A DNA stretch of 64,000 bases from Sphyrna mokarran (GCA_024679065.1 JAGIQG010000004.1:31310001-31374000); one strand, 5' to 3'. Positions 4,443 through 47,076 are shown, counted from the stretch's first letter. Program-made: numbers and translations. The notes: generated by a model from the sequence alone, not told the origin.

Positions 4443-4527
4443 TTAATTCAGGCGAAGATTTGGGTTTTTGTGTTTGGCATTTTTTAATCTATCCTTTCCA
4501 TCATTTGAAATGTTGTTCACCAGAATC
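4443..4527 (-). CDS. Last coding exon (capping LRR): WILVNNISNDGKDRLKNAKHKNPNLRLN*
   Basis: Acceptor tctttttctcttag, phase 2 entry, NLR-type C-terminal capping repeat ending in TAA (4445-4443); consensus donor AAG|GTAAGT follows at 4421/4420. Confidence 0.88.
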
Positions 4528-46500: not shown

Positions 46501-47076
46501 GGATGTGTGGAATTCACTATCATAGAAAGCAGTTGAGGTCAAAACGTTTGTGTGATTTCAAGAAGAAATTAGATACAGCTCTTGGGGTCTAAAGGGAACA
46601 AGTGCAACAGGTGGGGGGTGGGGGCTGGTGGAGAGACAAGGATATGGAATATAATGATCAGCCAGGGTCCTAATGAATGATAGTGCAGGCTTGAAGGGCC
46701 GGAGAGACTACTTCTGCTTCTAGTTTTCAACTAAAACTAGAAACTAAAAACTAGTTTTCAACAATACAGTCACAATCATTTGTTTTCCATCTTCTGAAGA
46801 TAATTGTTAAAACTGTTAAATCTTCAGGAAAGCAATTGTTTTGGCAATACTGCAATATACCAATTATTAGATTTATTGTATTATTAATAACTTTAGCCAG
46901 AATAATTATCCATCGTTCCCCCCTCTGTAGATTGAATCCTTAGAACGAAAGCTGAATTTAACTCGGCCAGAGGCAAATGACTGCCTTGTTTGTAGCAACA
47001 AAAGCGAAGGGCGTGTTCACTTACCTGCTACGGAAACAATGCAAAACGTCGTGAATTCTGTTAGAAAGTACCTCAT
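4443..47076 (-). CDS. Predicted 13-exon gene: type I transmembrane Ig receptor fused to an NLR (SP-IgV-IgC1-TM-intracellular Ig-CARD-NACHT-LRR), 1313 aa
   Basis: Exons 47025-47076, 38647-38985, 33352-33681, 30390-30497, 28131-28559, 26265-26702, 19408-21145, 16525-16611, 15561-15644, 14215-14298, 12081-12164, 6693-6776, 4443-4527. All introns GT-AG; first six phase 1, last six phase 2; total 3942 nt = 1314 codons with a single terminal TAA. Joining the Ig and NLR halves is inference from phases. Confidence 0.78.
5060..5400 (-). mobile_element. CR1 LINE 3' tail fragment
   Basis: atagaatcat..gaggccattcggtccatcgtgtct tail motif with a decayed ORF2 end. Confidence 0.6.
6693..6776 (-). CDS. LRR exon: RLGDNDITERGSDYFKSALGVNDTLEEL
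   Basis: 84 nt, phase 2-2; acceptor ttcttgtttgcag, donor TG|GTAAGA. Confidence 0.92.
6934..7256 (+). mobile_element. HE1/V-SINE-type tRNA-derived SINE
   Basis: ggcggcatggtggcacagtggttaacac head (A box), V core gtgggtttcctctgggtgttctggtttcc, tail gattctatgattct. Confidence 0.85.
7553..7580 (+). repeat. (GT)n microsatellite
   Basis: Direct observation. Confidence 0.9.
8130..8822 (-). mobile_element. LINE 3' fragment (CR1/L2 group)
   Basis: ORF MEYFSLAWMSAAPTVLKKLDTIQDKAIHLIG; the same family recurs at about 27410-27670. Confidence 0.75.
9478..10406. mobile_element. Non-autonomous PIF/Harbinger-type element
   Basis: Imperfect 16-bp TIRs (gggagtgattctccca ... tgggagaatcacccag) flanked on both sides by TAA (9475-9477, 10407-10409). 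Confidence 0.7.
12081..12164 (-). CDS. LRR exon: GLQFNKIGDEGAKYMAQAIKTNCSLVEL
   Basis: 84 nt, phase 2-2; acceptor tttgtcctatttcag, donor AG|GTAAGT. Confidence 0.94.
14215..14298 (-). CDS. LRR exon: GLRANTVRAKGAHLIAKALEINTTLRVL
   Basis: 84 nt, phase 2-2; acceptor ctttattttctccag, donor GG|GTATGT. Confidence 0.92.
14423..15558. mobile_element. Nested cluster: SINE (+; 14423-14555 and 15396-15558) split by a CR1 3' end (-; ~14560-15400), itself split by a V-SINE (+; ~15088-15352)
   Basis: Outer SINE resumes at atgaaaccattgtcg; CR1 sequence (..ggcctcaccaacaccctgt | aattgcaacaaaacctccc..) continues across the inner SINE. Confidence 0.7.
15561..15644 (-). CDS. LRR exon: RLKHNSIGEKGAAQIAEALKTNSSLKTL
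   Basis: 84 nt, phase 2-2, NLRC3/NOD-type LRR; ttcacag acceptor, GG|GTATGT donor. Confidence 0.93.
16525..16611 (-). CDS. LRR exon: SLEGNMLEDEGAEIIANALKSEKCRIEIL
   Basis: 87 nt, phase 2-2, ribonuclease-inhibitor-type LxxNxLxDxGxxxIxxAL; ttacag acceptor, AG|GTAAAA donor. Confidence 0.92.
17305..17830. mobile_element. Element with ~100-bp imperfect terminal inverted repeats (MITE-like), inside an old L2-like fragment
   Basis: tcttgcattcattagaacatttcgcaagaataccagta..agagtgctgattggttggcaa is mirrored by ttgccaatcaaacagcactct..tactggtattctcgcaaagtgtctgatgaatgcaaga. Confidence 0.65.
18270..18660 (-). mobile_element. Old SINE (DeuSINE-like)
   Basis: ttgcatttata..cagccaatgaagtactttt..aatgtag..ttcccac tail motif; related pieces at ~37050-37180 and ~49590-49830. 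Confidence 0.5.
19408..21145 (-). CDS. Exon 7: NACHT NTPase (FISNA-like lead-in, NBD, HD1, WHD, HD2) plus first LRRs; NLRC3/NOD-like
   Basis: Walker A GVAGIGKS, Walker B LFLFDGLDE, sensor 1 LLTSRP, EILGFS, CYVPAFC, winged-helix FFHLTHQEFFAALY; acceptor tttcctcttgtaattacag (phase 1), donor AG|GTATTA (phase 2); 1738 nt. Confidence 0.95.
22090..22465 (+). mobile_element. CR1 LINE 3' fragment
   Basis: Decayed RKDVIALEGMQRRFTRMLPG..RLGLFS..RRLRG..FFTQRV pattern. Confidence 0.85.
22473..24245 (+). mobile_element. V-SINE (head ~22473-22562, body ~23991-24245) interrupted by a ~1.4-kb nested insertion, including a Harbinger-like element with G-rich ctgatcgttgtctgg tandem units (~23050-23510)
   Basis: SINE head stops at ggtctgtgtgga and a body resumes at cactgtgtcggtgtgcagtttgcacattctccc; the insert ends ggtaaaatcaggccc. 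Confidence 0.55.
25300..25935. mobile_element. Harbinger-like non-autonomous remnant with poly-G/(GT)n/(CT)n tract at 25543-25597
   Basis: Shares ctggca/gtgcc-type motifs with the 9478-10406 element; simple repeats seen directly. Confidence 0.5.
26265..26702 (-). CDS. Exon 6: CARD (death-fold) domain plus linker
   Basis: IEEGRRIVVNYISPNILPLLKLLMSKRIISEDDHDVI...KGRTLLDMMSHRGQQSCAEFLKVLQD..LYPGL follows the CARD helical pattern (LLD...G..SC..FL..L); NAGNAG acceptor ttcTTAG/CAG, donor AAG|GTAAAT; 438 nt, phase 1-1. Confidence 0.87.
28131..28559 (-). CDS. Exon 5: atypical C1-like Ig domain C-terminal to the TM (predicted cytoplasmic)
   Basis: VSPTVTDI...LVCAVLWFKPKAISVSWY...NGAYSLISQLTI...YSFEVQH; F-strand Cys replaced by Phe; long internal insert; acceptor ttctctttatttttcag, donor AAG|GTGAGT; 429 nt, phase 1-1. 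Confidence 0.88.
28790..29260 (+). mobile_element. CR1 LINE internal fragment
   Basis: Decayed KSPG..EVALEIVDALVVIFQDS..SQH..KSCLT..VYLDFQK. Confidence 0.8.
29840..30245 (+). mobile_element. CR1 LINE 3' end
   Basis: FRRVRGD..RVENLWNS motif and tail ctcctatatcttatgaacttatg. Confidence 0.8.
30390..30497 (-). CDS. Exon 4: transmembrane exon GSRTRSRT-FLLTFLLTSMITAAVCFATIILY-SSKRK
   Basis: 23 uncharged, mostly hydrophobic residues followed by a basic KRK stop-transfer; acceptor ttttgcatttgtatag, donor AAG|GTGAAT; 108 nt, phase 1-1. Not in the ORF track. Confidence 0.82.
31360..31872 (-). mobile_element. Young 5'-truncated CR1 LINE
   Basis: Uninterrupted 141-aa ORF2 C-terminus (QFWSPHYKKDVEALERVQRRFTRMLPG..FFTQRVVREWNALP) plus a tandem atagaac tail. 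Confidence 0.92.
33352..33681 (-). CDS. Exon 3: C1-set Ig domain
   Basis: VPPTVSV...IICEMKRFYPEAHSISW...NQDGTF...YVCEISHEAL, with C1-set CxxxxFYP and YxCxxxH motifs; acceptor ttttcttggtag, donor G|GTGAGT; 330 nt, phase 1-1. Confidence 0.92.
34115..34422 (-). mobile_element. HE1/V-SINE-type SINE
   Basis: Reverse-complement head (ggcagcagtgctaaccactg), V core and tail; a second head (+) follows at ~34435-34525. Confidence 0.85.
34950..35142 (+). repeat. Minisatellite, ~39-bp unit, ~5 copies
   Basis: Unit approximately ttcctacaattctatctatatccataactattcctagta. Confidence 0.8.
35765..36040 (+). mobile_element. HE1/V-SINE-type SINE
   Basis: gcacggtggcacagtgattagcac head, V core, cacagtaacttcattgcag tail. 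Confidence 0.8.
36200..36800 (-). mobile_element. L2-clade LINE 3' fragment
   Basis: ORF LTDLFWFQLKQHFDFKIFVLVFKSLHGLSPSYL resembles the L2 ORF2 C-terminal motif (LHWLP..FK..L.FK.LHGLAP.YL). Confidence 0.75.
37448..38261 (+). mobile_element. Possible solo LTR inserted in CR1 remnants
   Basis: TGTT...AACA ends, CCAAT-rich middle, AATAAA at ~38172, CR1 pieces on both sides; no clean TSD found. Confidence 0.35.
38647..38985 (-). CDS. Exon 2: V-set Ig domain (B7/NCR3LG1/tapasin-like)
   Basis: GEDILLSC...IEW...ASLLLKNVTIQDVGSYSC with canonical C, W and DxGxYxC; N-glycosylation sequons NAT, NAS, NVT; acceptor ttttttaatgcag, donor G|GTATGT; 339 nt, phase 1-1. Confidence 0.92.
39283..39358 (+). repeat. 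Poly-G plus (GT)n simple repeat
   Basis: Direct observation. Confidence 0.9.
39600..42055 (+). mobile_element. Heavily decayed CR1 LINE (endonuclease to RT), with a SINE 3' part inserted at ~39875-40070
   Basis: Decayed YDLIAI.E, ESMWVEVRN, GVVCRPP, GNSDHNIVEF, QHGFM..KSCLTNLL, AKFA motifs. Confidence 0.85.
42180..45362 (-). mobile_element. Long decayed CR1 LINE (most of ORF2 plus tail)
   Basis: KVDKSP..MHSR.LKEMAEEIANAL, SDVLQGSVLGPQSFTIYINDL, FFTQRVVN; tail aacataagaactaggaataggagtaggcc. Confidence 0.9.
46040..46720 (+). mobile_element. CR1 LINE 3' end
   Basis: Decayed LLLLYKALVRPHLEYCVQF..RVLDVWNSL. Confidence 0.85.
47025..47076 (-). CDS. Exon 1: signal peptide MRYFLTEFTTFCIVSVA
   Basis: ATG at 47076, short hydrophobic stretch, consensus donor G|GTAAGT, phase 1 matching the IgV acceptor (..VSVA-A-SLEV). 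Not in the ORF track. Confidence 0.75.

What the first reader, a model, noticed from the sequence alone, without database searches (positions are those of the whole stretch)
4443..47076. Candidate transmembrane NLR: a B7-like Ig surface receptor fused in frame to a complete CARD-NACHT-LRR
Seen: 13 minus-strand exons with good GT-AG sites and matching phases give one stop-free 1313-aa frame, SP-IgV-IgC1-TM-Ig-CARD-NACHT-LRR. No stop-containing last exon was found between the Ig exons and CARD, and both CARD and NACHT exons start at phase-1 acceptors. Walker A/B, sensor 1 and the WHD histidine are intact. Established: vertebrate NLRs (NOD1/2, NLRC3-5, CIITA, NLRPs) are non-secretory intracellular proteins with an N-terminal effector domain, and V+C1+TM is a B7-H6/NCR3LG1- or tapasin-like arrangement. 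I know of no described vertebrate type I Ig receptor with an NLR as its tail. Inference: extracellular or luminal ligand binding could cluster NACHT and CARD at a membrane, or the Ig part could tether the sensor to a compartment.
Basis: partly seen in the sequence, partly recalled or inferred. Interest (0 to 1): 0.97.

Follow-up and report, generated by a model that had tools for sequence, protein, structure and literature searches.

The report
Shark membrane Ig receptor fused to NLR
One shark gene joins an antibody-like surface receptor, a membrane anchor and a complete intracellular danger sensor (NLR) in a single transcript, an arrangement kept in sharks and rays and at odds with the usual picture of vertebrate NLRs as free cytosolic proteins.

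Summary
Thirteen minus-strand exons (47076..4443) with 12 GT-AG introns and matching phases encode signal peptide, IgV, IgC1, TM, a cysteine-less third Ig, CARD, NACHT and 6 LRR exons.

Spliced contigs from four public runs, four organisms, join Ig3 to CARD in 4 of 4 and TM to Ig3 in 3 of 4. The X1 contig has 0 mismatches. One correction: the transcripts use a tandem acceptor 3 nt upstream (26705, not 26702), which stays in frame.

Fourteen RefSeq models from 12 shark and ray species have the same architecture. All 14 close NACHT relatives carry the Ig part, and the next relatives are at most about 33% identical. A nurse-shark GenBank entry of 1318 aa with the same domains is named "B7H6".

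It is therefore one gene: a type I membrane NLR with a B7-H6-like ectodomain. The sequence is not new to databases. Ten searches of the held library found no vertebrate description. The one paper most likely to describe it is not held.

Function is inferred: membrane-anchored NACHT oligomerisation with CARD signalling, direction unknown.

The scan also noted a similar "B7-NLR" on another piece of this genome (s1-887015), which I did not check.

The parts
47025..47076 (-). Exon 1: ATG and signal-peptide start (MRYFLTEFTTFCIVSVA + 1 base), phase-1 donor GTAAGT
   Evidence: Read. The length of contig X1 implies about 39 nt of 5'UTR upstream (arithmetic). The N-terminal hydrophobic peak is present in 11 of 12 orthologues.
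38647..38985 (-). Exon 2: IgV (B7-type), Cys pair, three N-glycosylation sequons (NAT, NAS, NVT)
   Evidence: Pfam V-set E=1.5e-08. PDB best matches are CD276 3e-13 and B7-H6 2e-08. Cys pair and sequons are conserved in 12 of 12 orthologues.
33352..33681 (-). Exon 3: IgC1 domain with Cys pair and SHEAL motif
   Evidence: Pfam C1-set E=1.5e-11. B7-H6/NCR3LG1 E=4e-14 is the best non-antibody PDB match.
30390..30497 (-). Exon 4: transmembrane helix (LLTFLLTSMITAAVCFATIILY) followed by SSKRK
   Evidence: Kyte-Doolittle 19-residue maximum is 2.15 here and 1.85-2.63 at the same place in 12 of 12 orthologues. It is spliced to exon 5 in contigs of X1, X2 and X7.
28131..28559 (-). Exon 5: third Ig-like domain (C1-set-like) on the cytoplasmic side, with a roughly 25-residue insert. 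The F-strand Cys is replaced by Phe.
   Evidence: Pfam partial C1-set E=4.6e-07. The AF2 model has 7 strands, pLDDT 67.5. Foldseek gave 213 PDB matches at E<=0.001, and all those listed are Ig domains. YSFEVQH-type Phe is present in 12 of 12 orthologues.
26265..26705 (-). Exon 6: CARD plus linker.
   Evidence: Pfam CARD E=1.3e-10. PDB best matches are ICEBERG 5e-07 and NOD1 CARD 2e-04. Joint 28131->26705 is seen in 4 of 4 runs.
19408..21145 (-). Exon 7: FISNA-like stretch, NACHT, WHD/HD2, first LRR. Phase-1 acceptor, phase-2 donor.
   Evidence: Pfam NACHT E=5.9e-33 and NLRC4_HD2 E=1.9e-12. PDB best match is NLRP3, 2.6e-41.
16525..16611 (-). Exon 8: LRR (87 nt)
   Evidence: tblastn of orthologues; AG/GT read.
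15561..15644 (-). Exon 9: LRR (84 nt)
   Evidence: It is 100% identical at the protein level to Carcharodon and Heterodontus.
14215..14298 (-). Exon 10: LRR (84 nt)
12081..12164 (-). Exon 11: LRR (84 nt)
6693..6776 (-). Exon 12: LRR (84 nt)
4443..4527 (-). Exon 13: C-terminal cap (…NPNLRLN) and stop TAA at 4445-4443
   Evidence: The 3' end of the transcript is not determined, and no canonical poly(A) hexamer was found in 3800-4442.

Best explanation
This is one gene for a type I membrane protein. It is the elasmobranch B7-H6-like molecule, and its cytoplasmic tail is a complete NLR.

Shown:
- The 13 exons are spliced into one open frame.
- The TM, Ig3 and CARD exons are joined in RNA-derived contigs.
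- The whole architecture is conserved as a single orthologous lineage in sharks and rays.

Inferred from sequence:
- The signal peptide sends IgV-IgC1 (two disulfide pairs, conserved N-glycan sequons) to the cell surface or an organelle lumen.
- One helix spans the membrane.
- A disulfide-less Ig-like spacer, CARD, an ATP-binding NACHT of the NLRP3-like lineage and about 6 LRRs face the cytosol.

Inferred mechanism:
- NACHT oligomerisation takes place on a membrane and brings the CARDs together. They then recruit a CARD partner; the caspase-1/ICEBERG, NOD1 and RIPK2 types are the nearest CARDs.
- My odds for the direction are as follows. About 45%: the conserved ectodomain is clustered from outside by an endogenous counter-receptor of the NKp30/NCR3 kind, and this drives the NLR (outside-in). 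About 30%: the NLR senses a cytosolic cue and changes the display of the ectodomain (inside-out). The rest: tethering only.
- Skipping of the phase-1 CARD exon, seen in RefSeq isoforms of two species, would give a signalling-silent form.
For: Transcripts:
- X1 contig of 4386 nt, with 0 mismatches, lies on 30390-30498 | 28131-28559 | 26265-26705.
- It has 759 nt upstream, against 721 nt expected for exons 1-3 plus UTR. It has 2648 nt downstream, against 2246 nt for exons 7-13 plus UTR.
- The same joints appear in X2, X3 and X7, which are other organisms at about 91-94% identity.
- 9 of 30 bins, all intronic, have zero depth in all four runs.
- Indels are in frame (3 nt) at 28438 and 30466.
- X1 held 0.27 of the words of 19401-29400, as expected for the three exons lying in that stretch.

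Orthologues:
- One search returned 17 hits. Fourteen are elasmobranch V-set+C1-set+NACHT models from 12 species, and 12 of those 14 also carry CARD.
- Every exon maps in the same order on the window.
- In one search the top 14, at >=75% identity, all carry Ig domains. The next hits are at most about 33% identical over most of their length.
- In one search only 1 of the best 150 representatives is above 36% identity.
- The tree gives an Ig-NLR clade with support 100 whose internal order follows shark and ray phylogeny. The clade sits with the NLRP3-like group, not with NLRC3.

Topology:
- TM peak in 12 of 12 orthologues and N-terminal peak in 11 of 12.
- The ectodomain Cys pairs and 3 sequons are conserved, whereas Ig3 lacks its F-strand Cys in 12 of 12.

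Constraint:
- Shark-ray protein identity is 59-67% for IgV, 60-69% for IgC1, 40-51% for Ig3, 57-65% for CARD and 76-80% for NACHT.
- From the partial list of differences, pN/pS is about 0.34 for CARD and 0.53 for Ig3.

Identity:
- GenBank QTT61908.1 'B7H6' from Ginglymostoma cirratum, 1318 aa, has the same domains.
- B7-H6 matches both ectodomain exons.
Against: - There are no protein data.
- Signal peptide and TM rest on hydropathy and conservation; no SignalP or TMHMM was available.
- The runs are labelled 'RNA?' (a guess). Logan contigs cannot prove that one molecule carries all 13 exons.
- The CARD->NACHT junction lay outside the 5000 bases laid, so it rests on contig length and on the orthologue models.
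- RefSeq models are automatic and may draw on the same kind of RNA data.
- Basic residues flank the TM helix on both sides.
- The best solved match for IgV is CD276 (B7-H3), not B7-H6. Orthology to B7-H6 was not tested by synteny.
- Gnomon also predicts isoforms that skip IgC1+TM (Mustelus X5) or IgV (Chiloscyllium X3), which would not be membrane proteins of this kind.
- Nothing here bears on the ligand, the partner or the direction of signalling.
Confidence: 0.72

Rival explanations
1. Inside-out sensor, working like butyrophilin BTN3A1. The cytosolic NACHT-LRR detects a danger or microbial cue. Its oligomerisation changes the clustering or conformation of the B7-H6-like ectodomain, which NKp30-family receptors on lymphocytes then read. 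This would be induced-self recognition hard-wired into one polypeptide.
For: - The ectodomain is B7-H6-like.
- The LRR exons are very conserved, 93-100% for exon 9 between this shark and rays or other sharks. That fits a fixed intracellular cue.
- A second, independent Ig-TM-NACHT family with butyrophilin-type Ig domains exists in bichirs.
- The BTN3A1 mechanism itself is recalled, not tested here.
Against: - A CARD is an effector module and is not needed for pure inside-out display.
- No ligand is known.
- Nothing in the sequence distinguishes the direction of signalling.
Confidence: 0.3
2. Tether only. The Ig-TM part simply fixes an otherwise ordinary NLR to one compartment (plasma membrane, ER or endosome/phagosome). 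The ectodomain has no signalling ligand.
For: - Other NLRs work at membranes through lipid anchors or basic patches (recalled; passages on NOD1/NOD2 and NLRX1 seen in PMC8699970).
- An elasmobranch NLRP3-like relative begins MGNSGSKK, which looks like a myristoylation site.
Against: A mere anchor would not need two Ig domains kept at 59-69% identity between sharks and rays, with conserved Cys pairs and sequons.
Confidence: 0.15
3. Two neighbouring genes, a B7-like receptor and a CARD-NACHT-LRR that starts at the ATG (MKRSDW) inside the CARD exon. On this view the fused forms are read-through chimeras or assembly and annotation artefacts, made in frame by the shared phase-1 exon structure.
For: - All exons from IgV to the NACHT acceptor are phase 1, so any such neighbours would join in frame.
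- An ATG lies 12 codons into the CARD exon.
- Reading through the TM-exon donor gives a stop after 2 codons, so an Ig-only product is conceivable.
Against: - The spliced junctions are the only form seen in 4 runs from 4 organisms.
- A nurse-shark GenBank protein and 14 RefSeq models carry the fusion.
- The internal Met is L or V in 4 of 12 orthologues.
- There is no un-fused close relative of the NLR part: 14 of 14 relatives at >=75% identity have Ig domains.
- Ig3 has no other home.
Confidence: 0.04

Closest known systems
B7-H6 / NCR3LG1 (ligand of the NK receptor NKp30)
   Same: - Signal peptide, IgV, IgC1 (C1-set) and a single TM helix.
- Human B7-H6 is the only solved protein matching both ectodomain exons (IgV E=2e-08, IgC1 E=4e-14).
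- The best non-NLR database relatives are turtle NCR3LG1, at 24-27% identity.
- GenBank QTT61908.1, the nurse-shark member of this family, is named B7H6 by its depositors.
   Different: - The tail here is about 1040 residues: Ig-like spacer, CARD, NACHT, LRR.
- The mammalian tail is short and unrelated (recalled).
- Binding to an NKp30-type receptor and synteny were not tested.
NLRP3 and the NLRP3-like lineage of NLRs
   Same: - The NACHT with its upstream FISNA-like stretch is closest to NLRP3 among solved structures (E=2.6e-41).
- In the tree it groups with NLRP3-like proteins of elasmobranchs, amphibians and bichirs (support 99, quick tree).
- Walker A, Walker B, sensor 1 and the WHD His are intact.
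   Different: - CARD instead of PYD.
- Only about 6 LRR exons of the 28-residue type.
- About 30% identity.
- N-terminal secretory Ig-TM module.
NLRC3 (the name RefSeq gives most orthologues)
   Same: CARD-like N-terminus, NACHT, 28-residue LRRs.
   Different: - True NLRC3 orthologues exist separately in elasmobranchs (Pristis, Stegostoma, Amblyraja) at 29-30% identity.
- They form a different clade, so the name is a misnomer.
Butyrophilin BTN3A1 (IgV-IgC-TM with an intracellular B30.2 sensor)
   Same: A B7-related ectodomain, one TM helix and an intracellular ligand-sensing domain in one chain. It is a model for inside-out signalling (recalled).
   Different: - No B30.2 domain.
- The sensor here is a STAND ATPase with CARD and LRR.
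AjNLRC4 of the sea cucumber Apostichopus japonicus
   Same: Extracellular Ig domains, a membrane span and an intracellular NACHT. It was shown experimentally to be a membrane receptor (PMC8699970, abstract and passages).
   Different: - Two TM helices.
- No CARD and no LRR.
- Invertebrate, with no sequence relationship shown.
Anthozoan NLRs with 3-5 N-terminal TM helices
   Same: Predicted membrane-bound NLRs (PMC5094078 and PMC3879445, passages).
   Different: - Multi-pass with no Ig ectodomain.
- Those authors state that all other metazoan NLRs are cytosolic.
Bichir (Polypterus/Erpetoichthys) butyrophilin-like Ig-TM-NACHT gene models
   Same: - V-set, Ig-C, a TM helix, then NACHT(+LRR).
- 18 of 42 hits carry both Ig and NACHT.
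- A TM peak at threshold 1.9 is seen in 7 of the 8 further models tested, and also in P0096.
   Different: - The C domain is of butyrophilin C2-set_3 type, with no Ig3 and no Pfam CARD.
- The family is multigene.
- Its NACHT sits in a separate clade with Ig-less bichir NLRs, so the fusion is probably independent.
- These are automatic models only.

Membership tests
NLR (NACHT-LRR STAND ATPases) | NACHT domain with Walker A, Walker B, sensor 1 and the winged-helix His | tested here: met
   Pfam NACHT E=5.9e-33 and NLRC4_HD2 E=1.9e-12. The motifs GVAGIGKS, LFLFDGLDE, LLTSRP and FFHLTHQEFFAA were located.
NLR (NACHT-LRR STAND ATPases) | C-terminal leucine-rich repeats | tested here: met
   Six LRR exons of 84-87 nt map to orthologue LRRs. 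Pfam LRR_6 is found in orthologues.
NLR (NACHT-LRR STAND ATPases) | Non-secretory, cytosolic protein (textbook property) | tested here: not met
   An N-terminal signal-peptide-like segment, two disulfide-type Ig domains with conserved sequons and a TM helix precede the NLR part. This is sequence inference only.
NLRC3 orthologue | Closest relationship to NLRC3 of other vertebrates | tested here: not met
   29-30% identity to true elasmobranch NLRC3, and a separate clade in the tree.
NLRP3 / NLRP subfamily | N-terminal pyrin domain | tested here: not met
   No PYD was found. Pfam finds CARD, E=1.3e-10.
B7 family / B7-H6 (NCR3LG1) | Signal peptide, IgV, IgC, single TM | tested here: met
B7 family / B7-H6 (NCR3LG1) | Orthology (synteny, reciprocal best match) with tetrapod NCR3LG1 | tested here: inconclusive
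   - The C1 exon is closest to B7-H6, but the V exon is closest to CD276.
- Turtle NCR3LG1 are the best non-NLR hits, but that search covered only proteins of 642-2044 aa.
- The depositors' name is B7H6.
B7 family / B7-H6 (NCR3LG1) | Binds NKp30/NCR3 | not testable with these tools
   Needs binding assays.
Butyrophilin | Intracellular B30.2/SPRY domain | tested here: not met
   No SPRY or B30.2 hit in any exon or orthologue.
AjNLRC4-type echinoderm membrane NLR | Ig ectodomain, two TM helices, NACHT without CARD or LRR | tested here: not met
   One TM peak, with CARD and LRR present. The description of AjNLRC4 is from PMC8699970.

The most novel reading that the evidence does not exclude
In elasmobranchs the NKp30 ligand B7-H6 is itself an NLR, so 'induced-self' recognition and cytosolic danger sensing are one molecule. 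Two directions are possible. Either the NACHT-LRR tail decides when the ectodomain becomes visible to NCR3-bearing lymphocytes, or engagement by those lymphocytes clusters the tail and fires a CARD-caspase death or inflammatory signal in the target cell, as a death receptor built from an NLR. With the independent butyrophilin-NLR family of bichirs, this would mean that early jawed vertebrates repeatedly wired B7/butyrophilin ectodomains to NLRs, and that the short tails of tetrapod B7-H6 are secondary.
Probability: 0.25. Interest if true: 0.95.

Novelty: new variant of a known kind. Interest (0 to 1): 0.78.

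Why it matters
Vertebrate NLRs are taught as soluble cytosolic sensors. Membrane-spanning NLRs have so far been reported only from anthozoans and a sea cucumber (PMC5094078, PMC3879445, PMC8699970).

Here a complete CARD-NACHT-LRR hangs from a B7-H6-like surface receptor. 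The combination is expressed and has been kept in sharks and rays since their common ancestor. It joins two fields that are usually treated apart: NK-type recognition of B7 ligands, and inflammasome or nodosome-type signalling.

It also gives a natural system for asking whether NACHT oligomerisation can be driven from outside the cell or can signal outward. It corrects the database names (NLRC3-like, NOD1-like, PLEKHF1). And it points to a second, independent Ig-TM-NLR family in bichirs.

The weight of the finding depends on whether the nurse-shark 'B7H6' depositors have already described the NLR tail in print. I could not check this.

Tried and rejected
1. Two-gene reading with an internal start at MKRSDW. 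This was my first guess, at 65%. I rejected it.

2. Assembly misjoin between 21 and 30 kb. Rejected: the same exon order appears in 12 other species and in transcript contigs.

3. Membership in NLRC3. Rejected.

4. One common origin with the bichir butyrophilin-NLRs. Judged unlikely. The Ig-C type differs, and the NACHT clades are separated by Ig-less NLRP3-like clades. However, the tree is a 'quick' one, unrooted, and it carries a long-branch warning.

5. A motif scan for LRR exons found almost nothing. tblastn with orthologues replaced it.

Instead I classified the 40 of 118 differences that one search lists. This is partial, uncorrected and based on small counts.

7. No canonical poly(A) signal was found within 640 nt of the stop. 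The 3' end is left open.

8. Pfam on six intronic ORFs gave 0 families.

9. ORFs in 47.4-64 kb show no neighbouring gene.

10. Literature. Ten searches found no vertebrate Ig-TM-NLR description.
- Passages were read in PMC8455134, PMC8699970, PMC5094078, PMC3879445, PMC10751288 and PMC12227049.
- Only reference lists were seen in PMC3964593, PMC10450919 and PMC12272517.
- Not held, so nothing was seen: Flajnik et al. 2012 (PMC3709836), Ohta & Flajnik 2015 (PMC4594805) and Kinlein et al. 2021 (PMC8273117). The last may describe the nurse-shark B7H6.
- Supplements are closed. Supplementary file 12 of the whale-shark paper may list the Rhincodon orthologue.

Full report
WHAT IS IN THE SEQUENCE

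That is 5 of 5 ORFs tested.

Reading the flanks and mapping orthologous proteins by tblastn gives 13 exons with 12 GT..AG introns. Exon 8 is 87 nt (16611-16525), which corrects my first boundary.
- The phase is 1 from exon 1 to the NACHT acceptor and 2 from the NACHT donor through the LRR exons.
- Exon lengths add up to 3942 nt, which is 1313 codons plus TAA at 4445-4443.
- I did this by arithmetic. The joined model was never assembled, searched or folded.
- The ATPase motifs are intact.

I note that phase agreement by itself says little, because Ig exons and the CARD and NACHT acceptors are all phase 1.

IS IT ONE TRANSCRIPT?

My starting guess was two genes. The CARD exon holds an ATG 12 codons after its acceptor, and reading through the TM-exon donor gives a stop after two codons.

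The read evidence overturned this. The look-up of sequencing runs returned 12 runs, none on record as RNA. X1 held 0.27 of the words of 19401-29400, which is what Ig3 + CARD + NACHT exons alone would give (about 0.26).

I laid X1, X2, X3 and X7 on 26001-31000.
- X1 has a 4386-nt contig with no mismatch. It lies on 30390-30498, 28131-28559 and 26265-26705 in consecutive contig positions 760-1738.
- Contigs of 4488, 3008 and 3508 nt from three other coded organisms do the same, at about 91-94% identity.
- The Ig3->CARD joint is present in 4 of 4 runs.
- The TM->Ig3 joint is present in 3 of 4. The X3 contig starts inside Ig3.
- Nine of 30 bins, all intronic, have zero depth in every run. The covered intronic bins are repeats with many 90-95% matches. 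The runs therefore behave as transcriptomes, although their label is only a guess.
- The 759 nt upstream of the TM exon in the X1 contig fit exons 1-3 (721 nt) plus a short UTR. The 2648 nt downstream fit exons 7-13 (2246 nt) plus UTR.

Limits:
- Contigs do not prove single molecules.
- The CARD->NACHT junction was outside the laid stretch.

A correction follows from the same table. The intron ends at the AG of 26707-26706, so the CARD exon begins at 26705, not 26702. This is a tandem NAGNAG acceptor that adds one Ala codon. Mustelus RefSeq isoforms X3 (…EIKAGACD…) and X4 (…EIKGACD…) show both forms.

RELATIVES

An exhaustive HMMER search with the NACHT exon found 4652 proteins at E<=0.001. 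Only one of the best 150 was above 36% identity: P0002, at 76%. This is XP_069757801.1 of the ray Narcine bancroftii. Its architecture is SP-V-C1-TM-Ig3-NACHT-LRR, without CARD.

Searching its first 425 residues among proteins of 642-2044 aa gave 17 hits.
- Fourteen are elasmobranch models with V-set, C1-set and NACHT. Twelve of these also have CARD.
- They come from 12 species spanning Carcharhiniformes, Lamniformes, Orectolobiformes, Heterodontiformes, Hexanchiformes, Pristiophoriformes and three batoid orders.
- Two hits are turtle NCR3LG1 (24-27% identity).
- One is an unrelated multi-Ig protein.

Searching the CARD-NACHT-LRR part of the Carcharodon protein gave 1678 hits at E<=1e-30. The 14 with >=75% identity are the same Ig-bearing proteins. 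After them, identity over most of the length falls to 24-33% (NLRC3, NLRP3-like, NLRP12-like). No holocephalan protein appeared, which does not prove absence.

Every orthologue maps exon for exon on the window. The closest is Mustelus asterias:

| Domain | Identity to Mustelus |
|---|---|
| IgV | 88% |
| IgC1 | 86% |
| Ig3 | 85% |
| CARD | 84% |
| NACHT | 94% |

The window is therefore a carcharhiniform shark that is not among the listed species.

A tree of 43 NACHT-region rows, chosen by me with none dropped (quick method), shows:
- The Ig-NLRs form one clade (support 100) whose branching follows shark and ray phylogeny.
- That clade joins the NLRP3-like clade (support 99) and is apart from NLRC3.
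- The tool warns that long branches meet there.

Cluster look-ups added more species: Chiloscyllium punctatum, Scyliorhinus torazame, Cetorhinus, Mobula birostris and Hypanus. Most importantly, they added QTT61908.1, "natural killer cell cytotoxicity receptor 3 ligand (B7H6)" of the nurse shark. It is 1318 aa, with V-set, C1-set, CARD, NACHT, HD2 and LRR, and it maps on all exons of the window.

TOPOLOGY AND CONSTRAINT

I aligned 12 full-length orthologues with the window's exons as separate rows. The following are conserved throughout:
- the hydrophobic N-terminus
- the IgV Cys pair
- three sequons (NAT, NAS, NVT)
- the IgC1 Cys pair with SHEAL
- the hydrophobic TM segment

The third Ig keeps its B-strand Cys, but has Phe in place of the F-strand Cys in 12 of 12. 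This agrees with the scan's own note s1-887788 and with a reducing, cytosolic location.

Hydropathy gives a TM peak (1.85-2.63) in 12 of 12 orthologues, and 2.15 in exon 4 of the window. It gives an N-terminal peak in 11 of 12.

The Met inside the CARD exon is L or V in 4 of 12.

An AlphaFold2 model of the Ig3 exon, made with the orthologues as its alignment (A1), is a seven-stranded sandwich with a disordered insert (pLDDT 67.5, pTM 0.67). Foldseek returns only Ig domains among the listed matches: 213 at E<=0.001, with TM-scores up to 0.53.

Shark-ray identities are 59-69% for the ectodomain, 40-51% for Ig3, 57-65% for CARD and 76-80% for NACHT.

Only part of the differences is listed, so the following figures are rough:

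| Exon | Differences listed | Changed codons, synonymous : non-synonymous | pN/pS |
|---|---|---|---|
| CARD | 17 of 25 | 7:9 | about 0.34 |
| Ig3 | 23 of 39 | 7:14 | about 0.53 |

(X2 differences.) The two indels inside exons are 3 nt long.

WHAT IT RESEMBLES

Solved structures:
- NACHT is closest to NLRP3 (2.6e-41).
- CARD is closest to ICEBERG (5e-07), then the NOD1 and RIPK2 CARDs.
- IgV is closest to CD276 (3e-13), then B7-H6 and B7-H4 (2e-08).
- IgC1 is closest to B7-H6 (4e-14) among non-antibody chains.

B7-H6 is the only chain that matches both ectodomain exons.

HOW IT PROBABLY WORKS (INFERENCE)

It is a type I membrane protein whose ectodomain is a B7-H6-like ligand or receptor, and whose tail is an ATP-driven oligomerising NLR with a CARD effector.
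- The high conservation of ectodomain and LRRs, together with single-copy orthology, argues for fixed endogenous partners rather than an arms race.
- I favour outside-in clustering that drives CARD signalling (about 45%). Inside-out display of BTN3A1 type is about 30%, and mere tethering about 15%.
- CARD-less isoforms (Narcine X4, Pristiophorus X2) could be regulatory.

None of this was tested.

NOVELTY

Precedents in print:
- Anthozoan multi-TM NLRs (PMC3879445, PMC5094078; passages). The latter states that other metazoan NLRs are exclusively cytosolic.
- The sea-cucumber AjNLRC4, with an Ig ectodomain, two TM helices and a NACHT but no CARD or LRR (PMC8699970, abstract and passages).

The main text of the whale-shark genome paper does not mention Ig-bearing NLRs (passages). 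Its supplements are closed.

Ten library searches found no vertebrate case. The sequence is nevertheless public, and its nurse-shark form was named B7H6 by its depositors. The paper I recall from that time (Kinlein et al. 2021; its citation was seen) is not held. Prior description therefore cannot be excluded. I file the finding as a new variant of a known kind, with that caveat.

SEEN IN PASSING

Bichirs have a multigene family of butyrophilin-like V + Ig-C + TM + NACHT models.
- 18 of 42 hits carry both Ig and NACHT.
- TM peaks are seen.
- Their NACHT clusters with Ig-less bichir NLRs.

This suggests an independent fusion of the same kind.

Noticed in passing
window 26702-26707 (minus strand): Tandem NAGNAG acceptor of the CARD exon. 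All four transcript contigs use the upstream AG, so the exon starts at 26705 and gains one Ala. Mustelus isoforms X3 and X4 show both.
   Followed up: yes
proteins P0096, P0272-P0291 (Polypterus senegalus, Erpetoichthys calabaricus): A multigene family of automatic models with V-set, butyrophilin-type Ig-C, a TM helix and NACHT(+LRR). 18 of 42 hits carry both Ig and NACHT. Their NACHT clade is separate from the elasmobranch one, so this is probably an independent Ig-TM-NLR fusion. No paper on it was found.
   Followed up: partly
proteins P0002, P0155, P0321, P0316 (orthologue isoforms): RefSeq predicts frame-preserving exon skipping: CARD skipped (Narcine X4, Pristiophorus X2), IgC1+TM skipped (Mustelus X5, IgV joined directly to Ig3) and IgV missing (Chiloscyllium X3). 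Whether these occur in this shark is unknown.
   Followed up: partly
protein P0330 (Cetorhinus maximus) and others: Database names for this orthologous group are inconsistent: NLRC3-like, NOD1-like, 'uncharacterized', B7H6, and 'pleckstrin homology domain-containing family F member 1 isoform X1' for the 1317-aa basking-shark protein.
   Followed up: no
window 263-562, 31448-31882, 42270-42611 (minus strand): Three similar ORF tails (…FFTQRVV…W…LP…VV…FK…LD…) that look like copies of an interspersed repeat. Neighbouring ORFs at 42931-44416 look the same. Pfam gave no match for the five tested. Intronic places at 27337-27503, 28840-29173 and 29842-30342 attract many 90-95% contigs in all four runs.
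   Followed up: partly
window 22900-25900: A G+C-richer intronic stretch (0.47-0.51 against about 0.38-0.40) with CA microsatellites and C-runs. It gives long Pro-rich pseudo-ORFs on the minus strand. No Pfam match for 23090-23785.
   Followed up: partly
protein P0237 (Heterodontus francisci, 'NLRP3-like'): This Ig-less elasmobranch relative begins MGNSGSKK, which looks like an N-myristoylation site. It may be another route to membrane attachment in the sister lineage. None of the 7 NLRP3-like proteins tested had Ig domains or a TM peak.
   Followed up: no
another piece of the same genome (note s1-887015): The scan's first stage noted a second 'B7-NLR', with a B7-type IgV and TM spliced to a NACHT, elsewhere in this genome. 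I could not see that DNA.
   Followed up: no
window 30466 and 28438: 3-nt in-frame deletions relative to the window in contigs of related organisms (TM exon in X2 and X3; Ig3 in X2). At 30466 the X1 depth is 55.8 against 30.5 for the main contig, probably a short allelic bubble.
   Followed up: no
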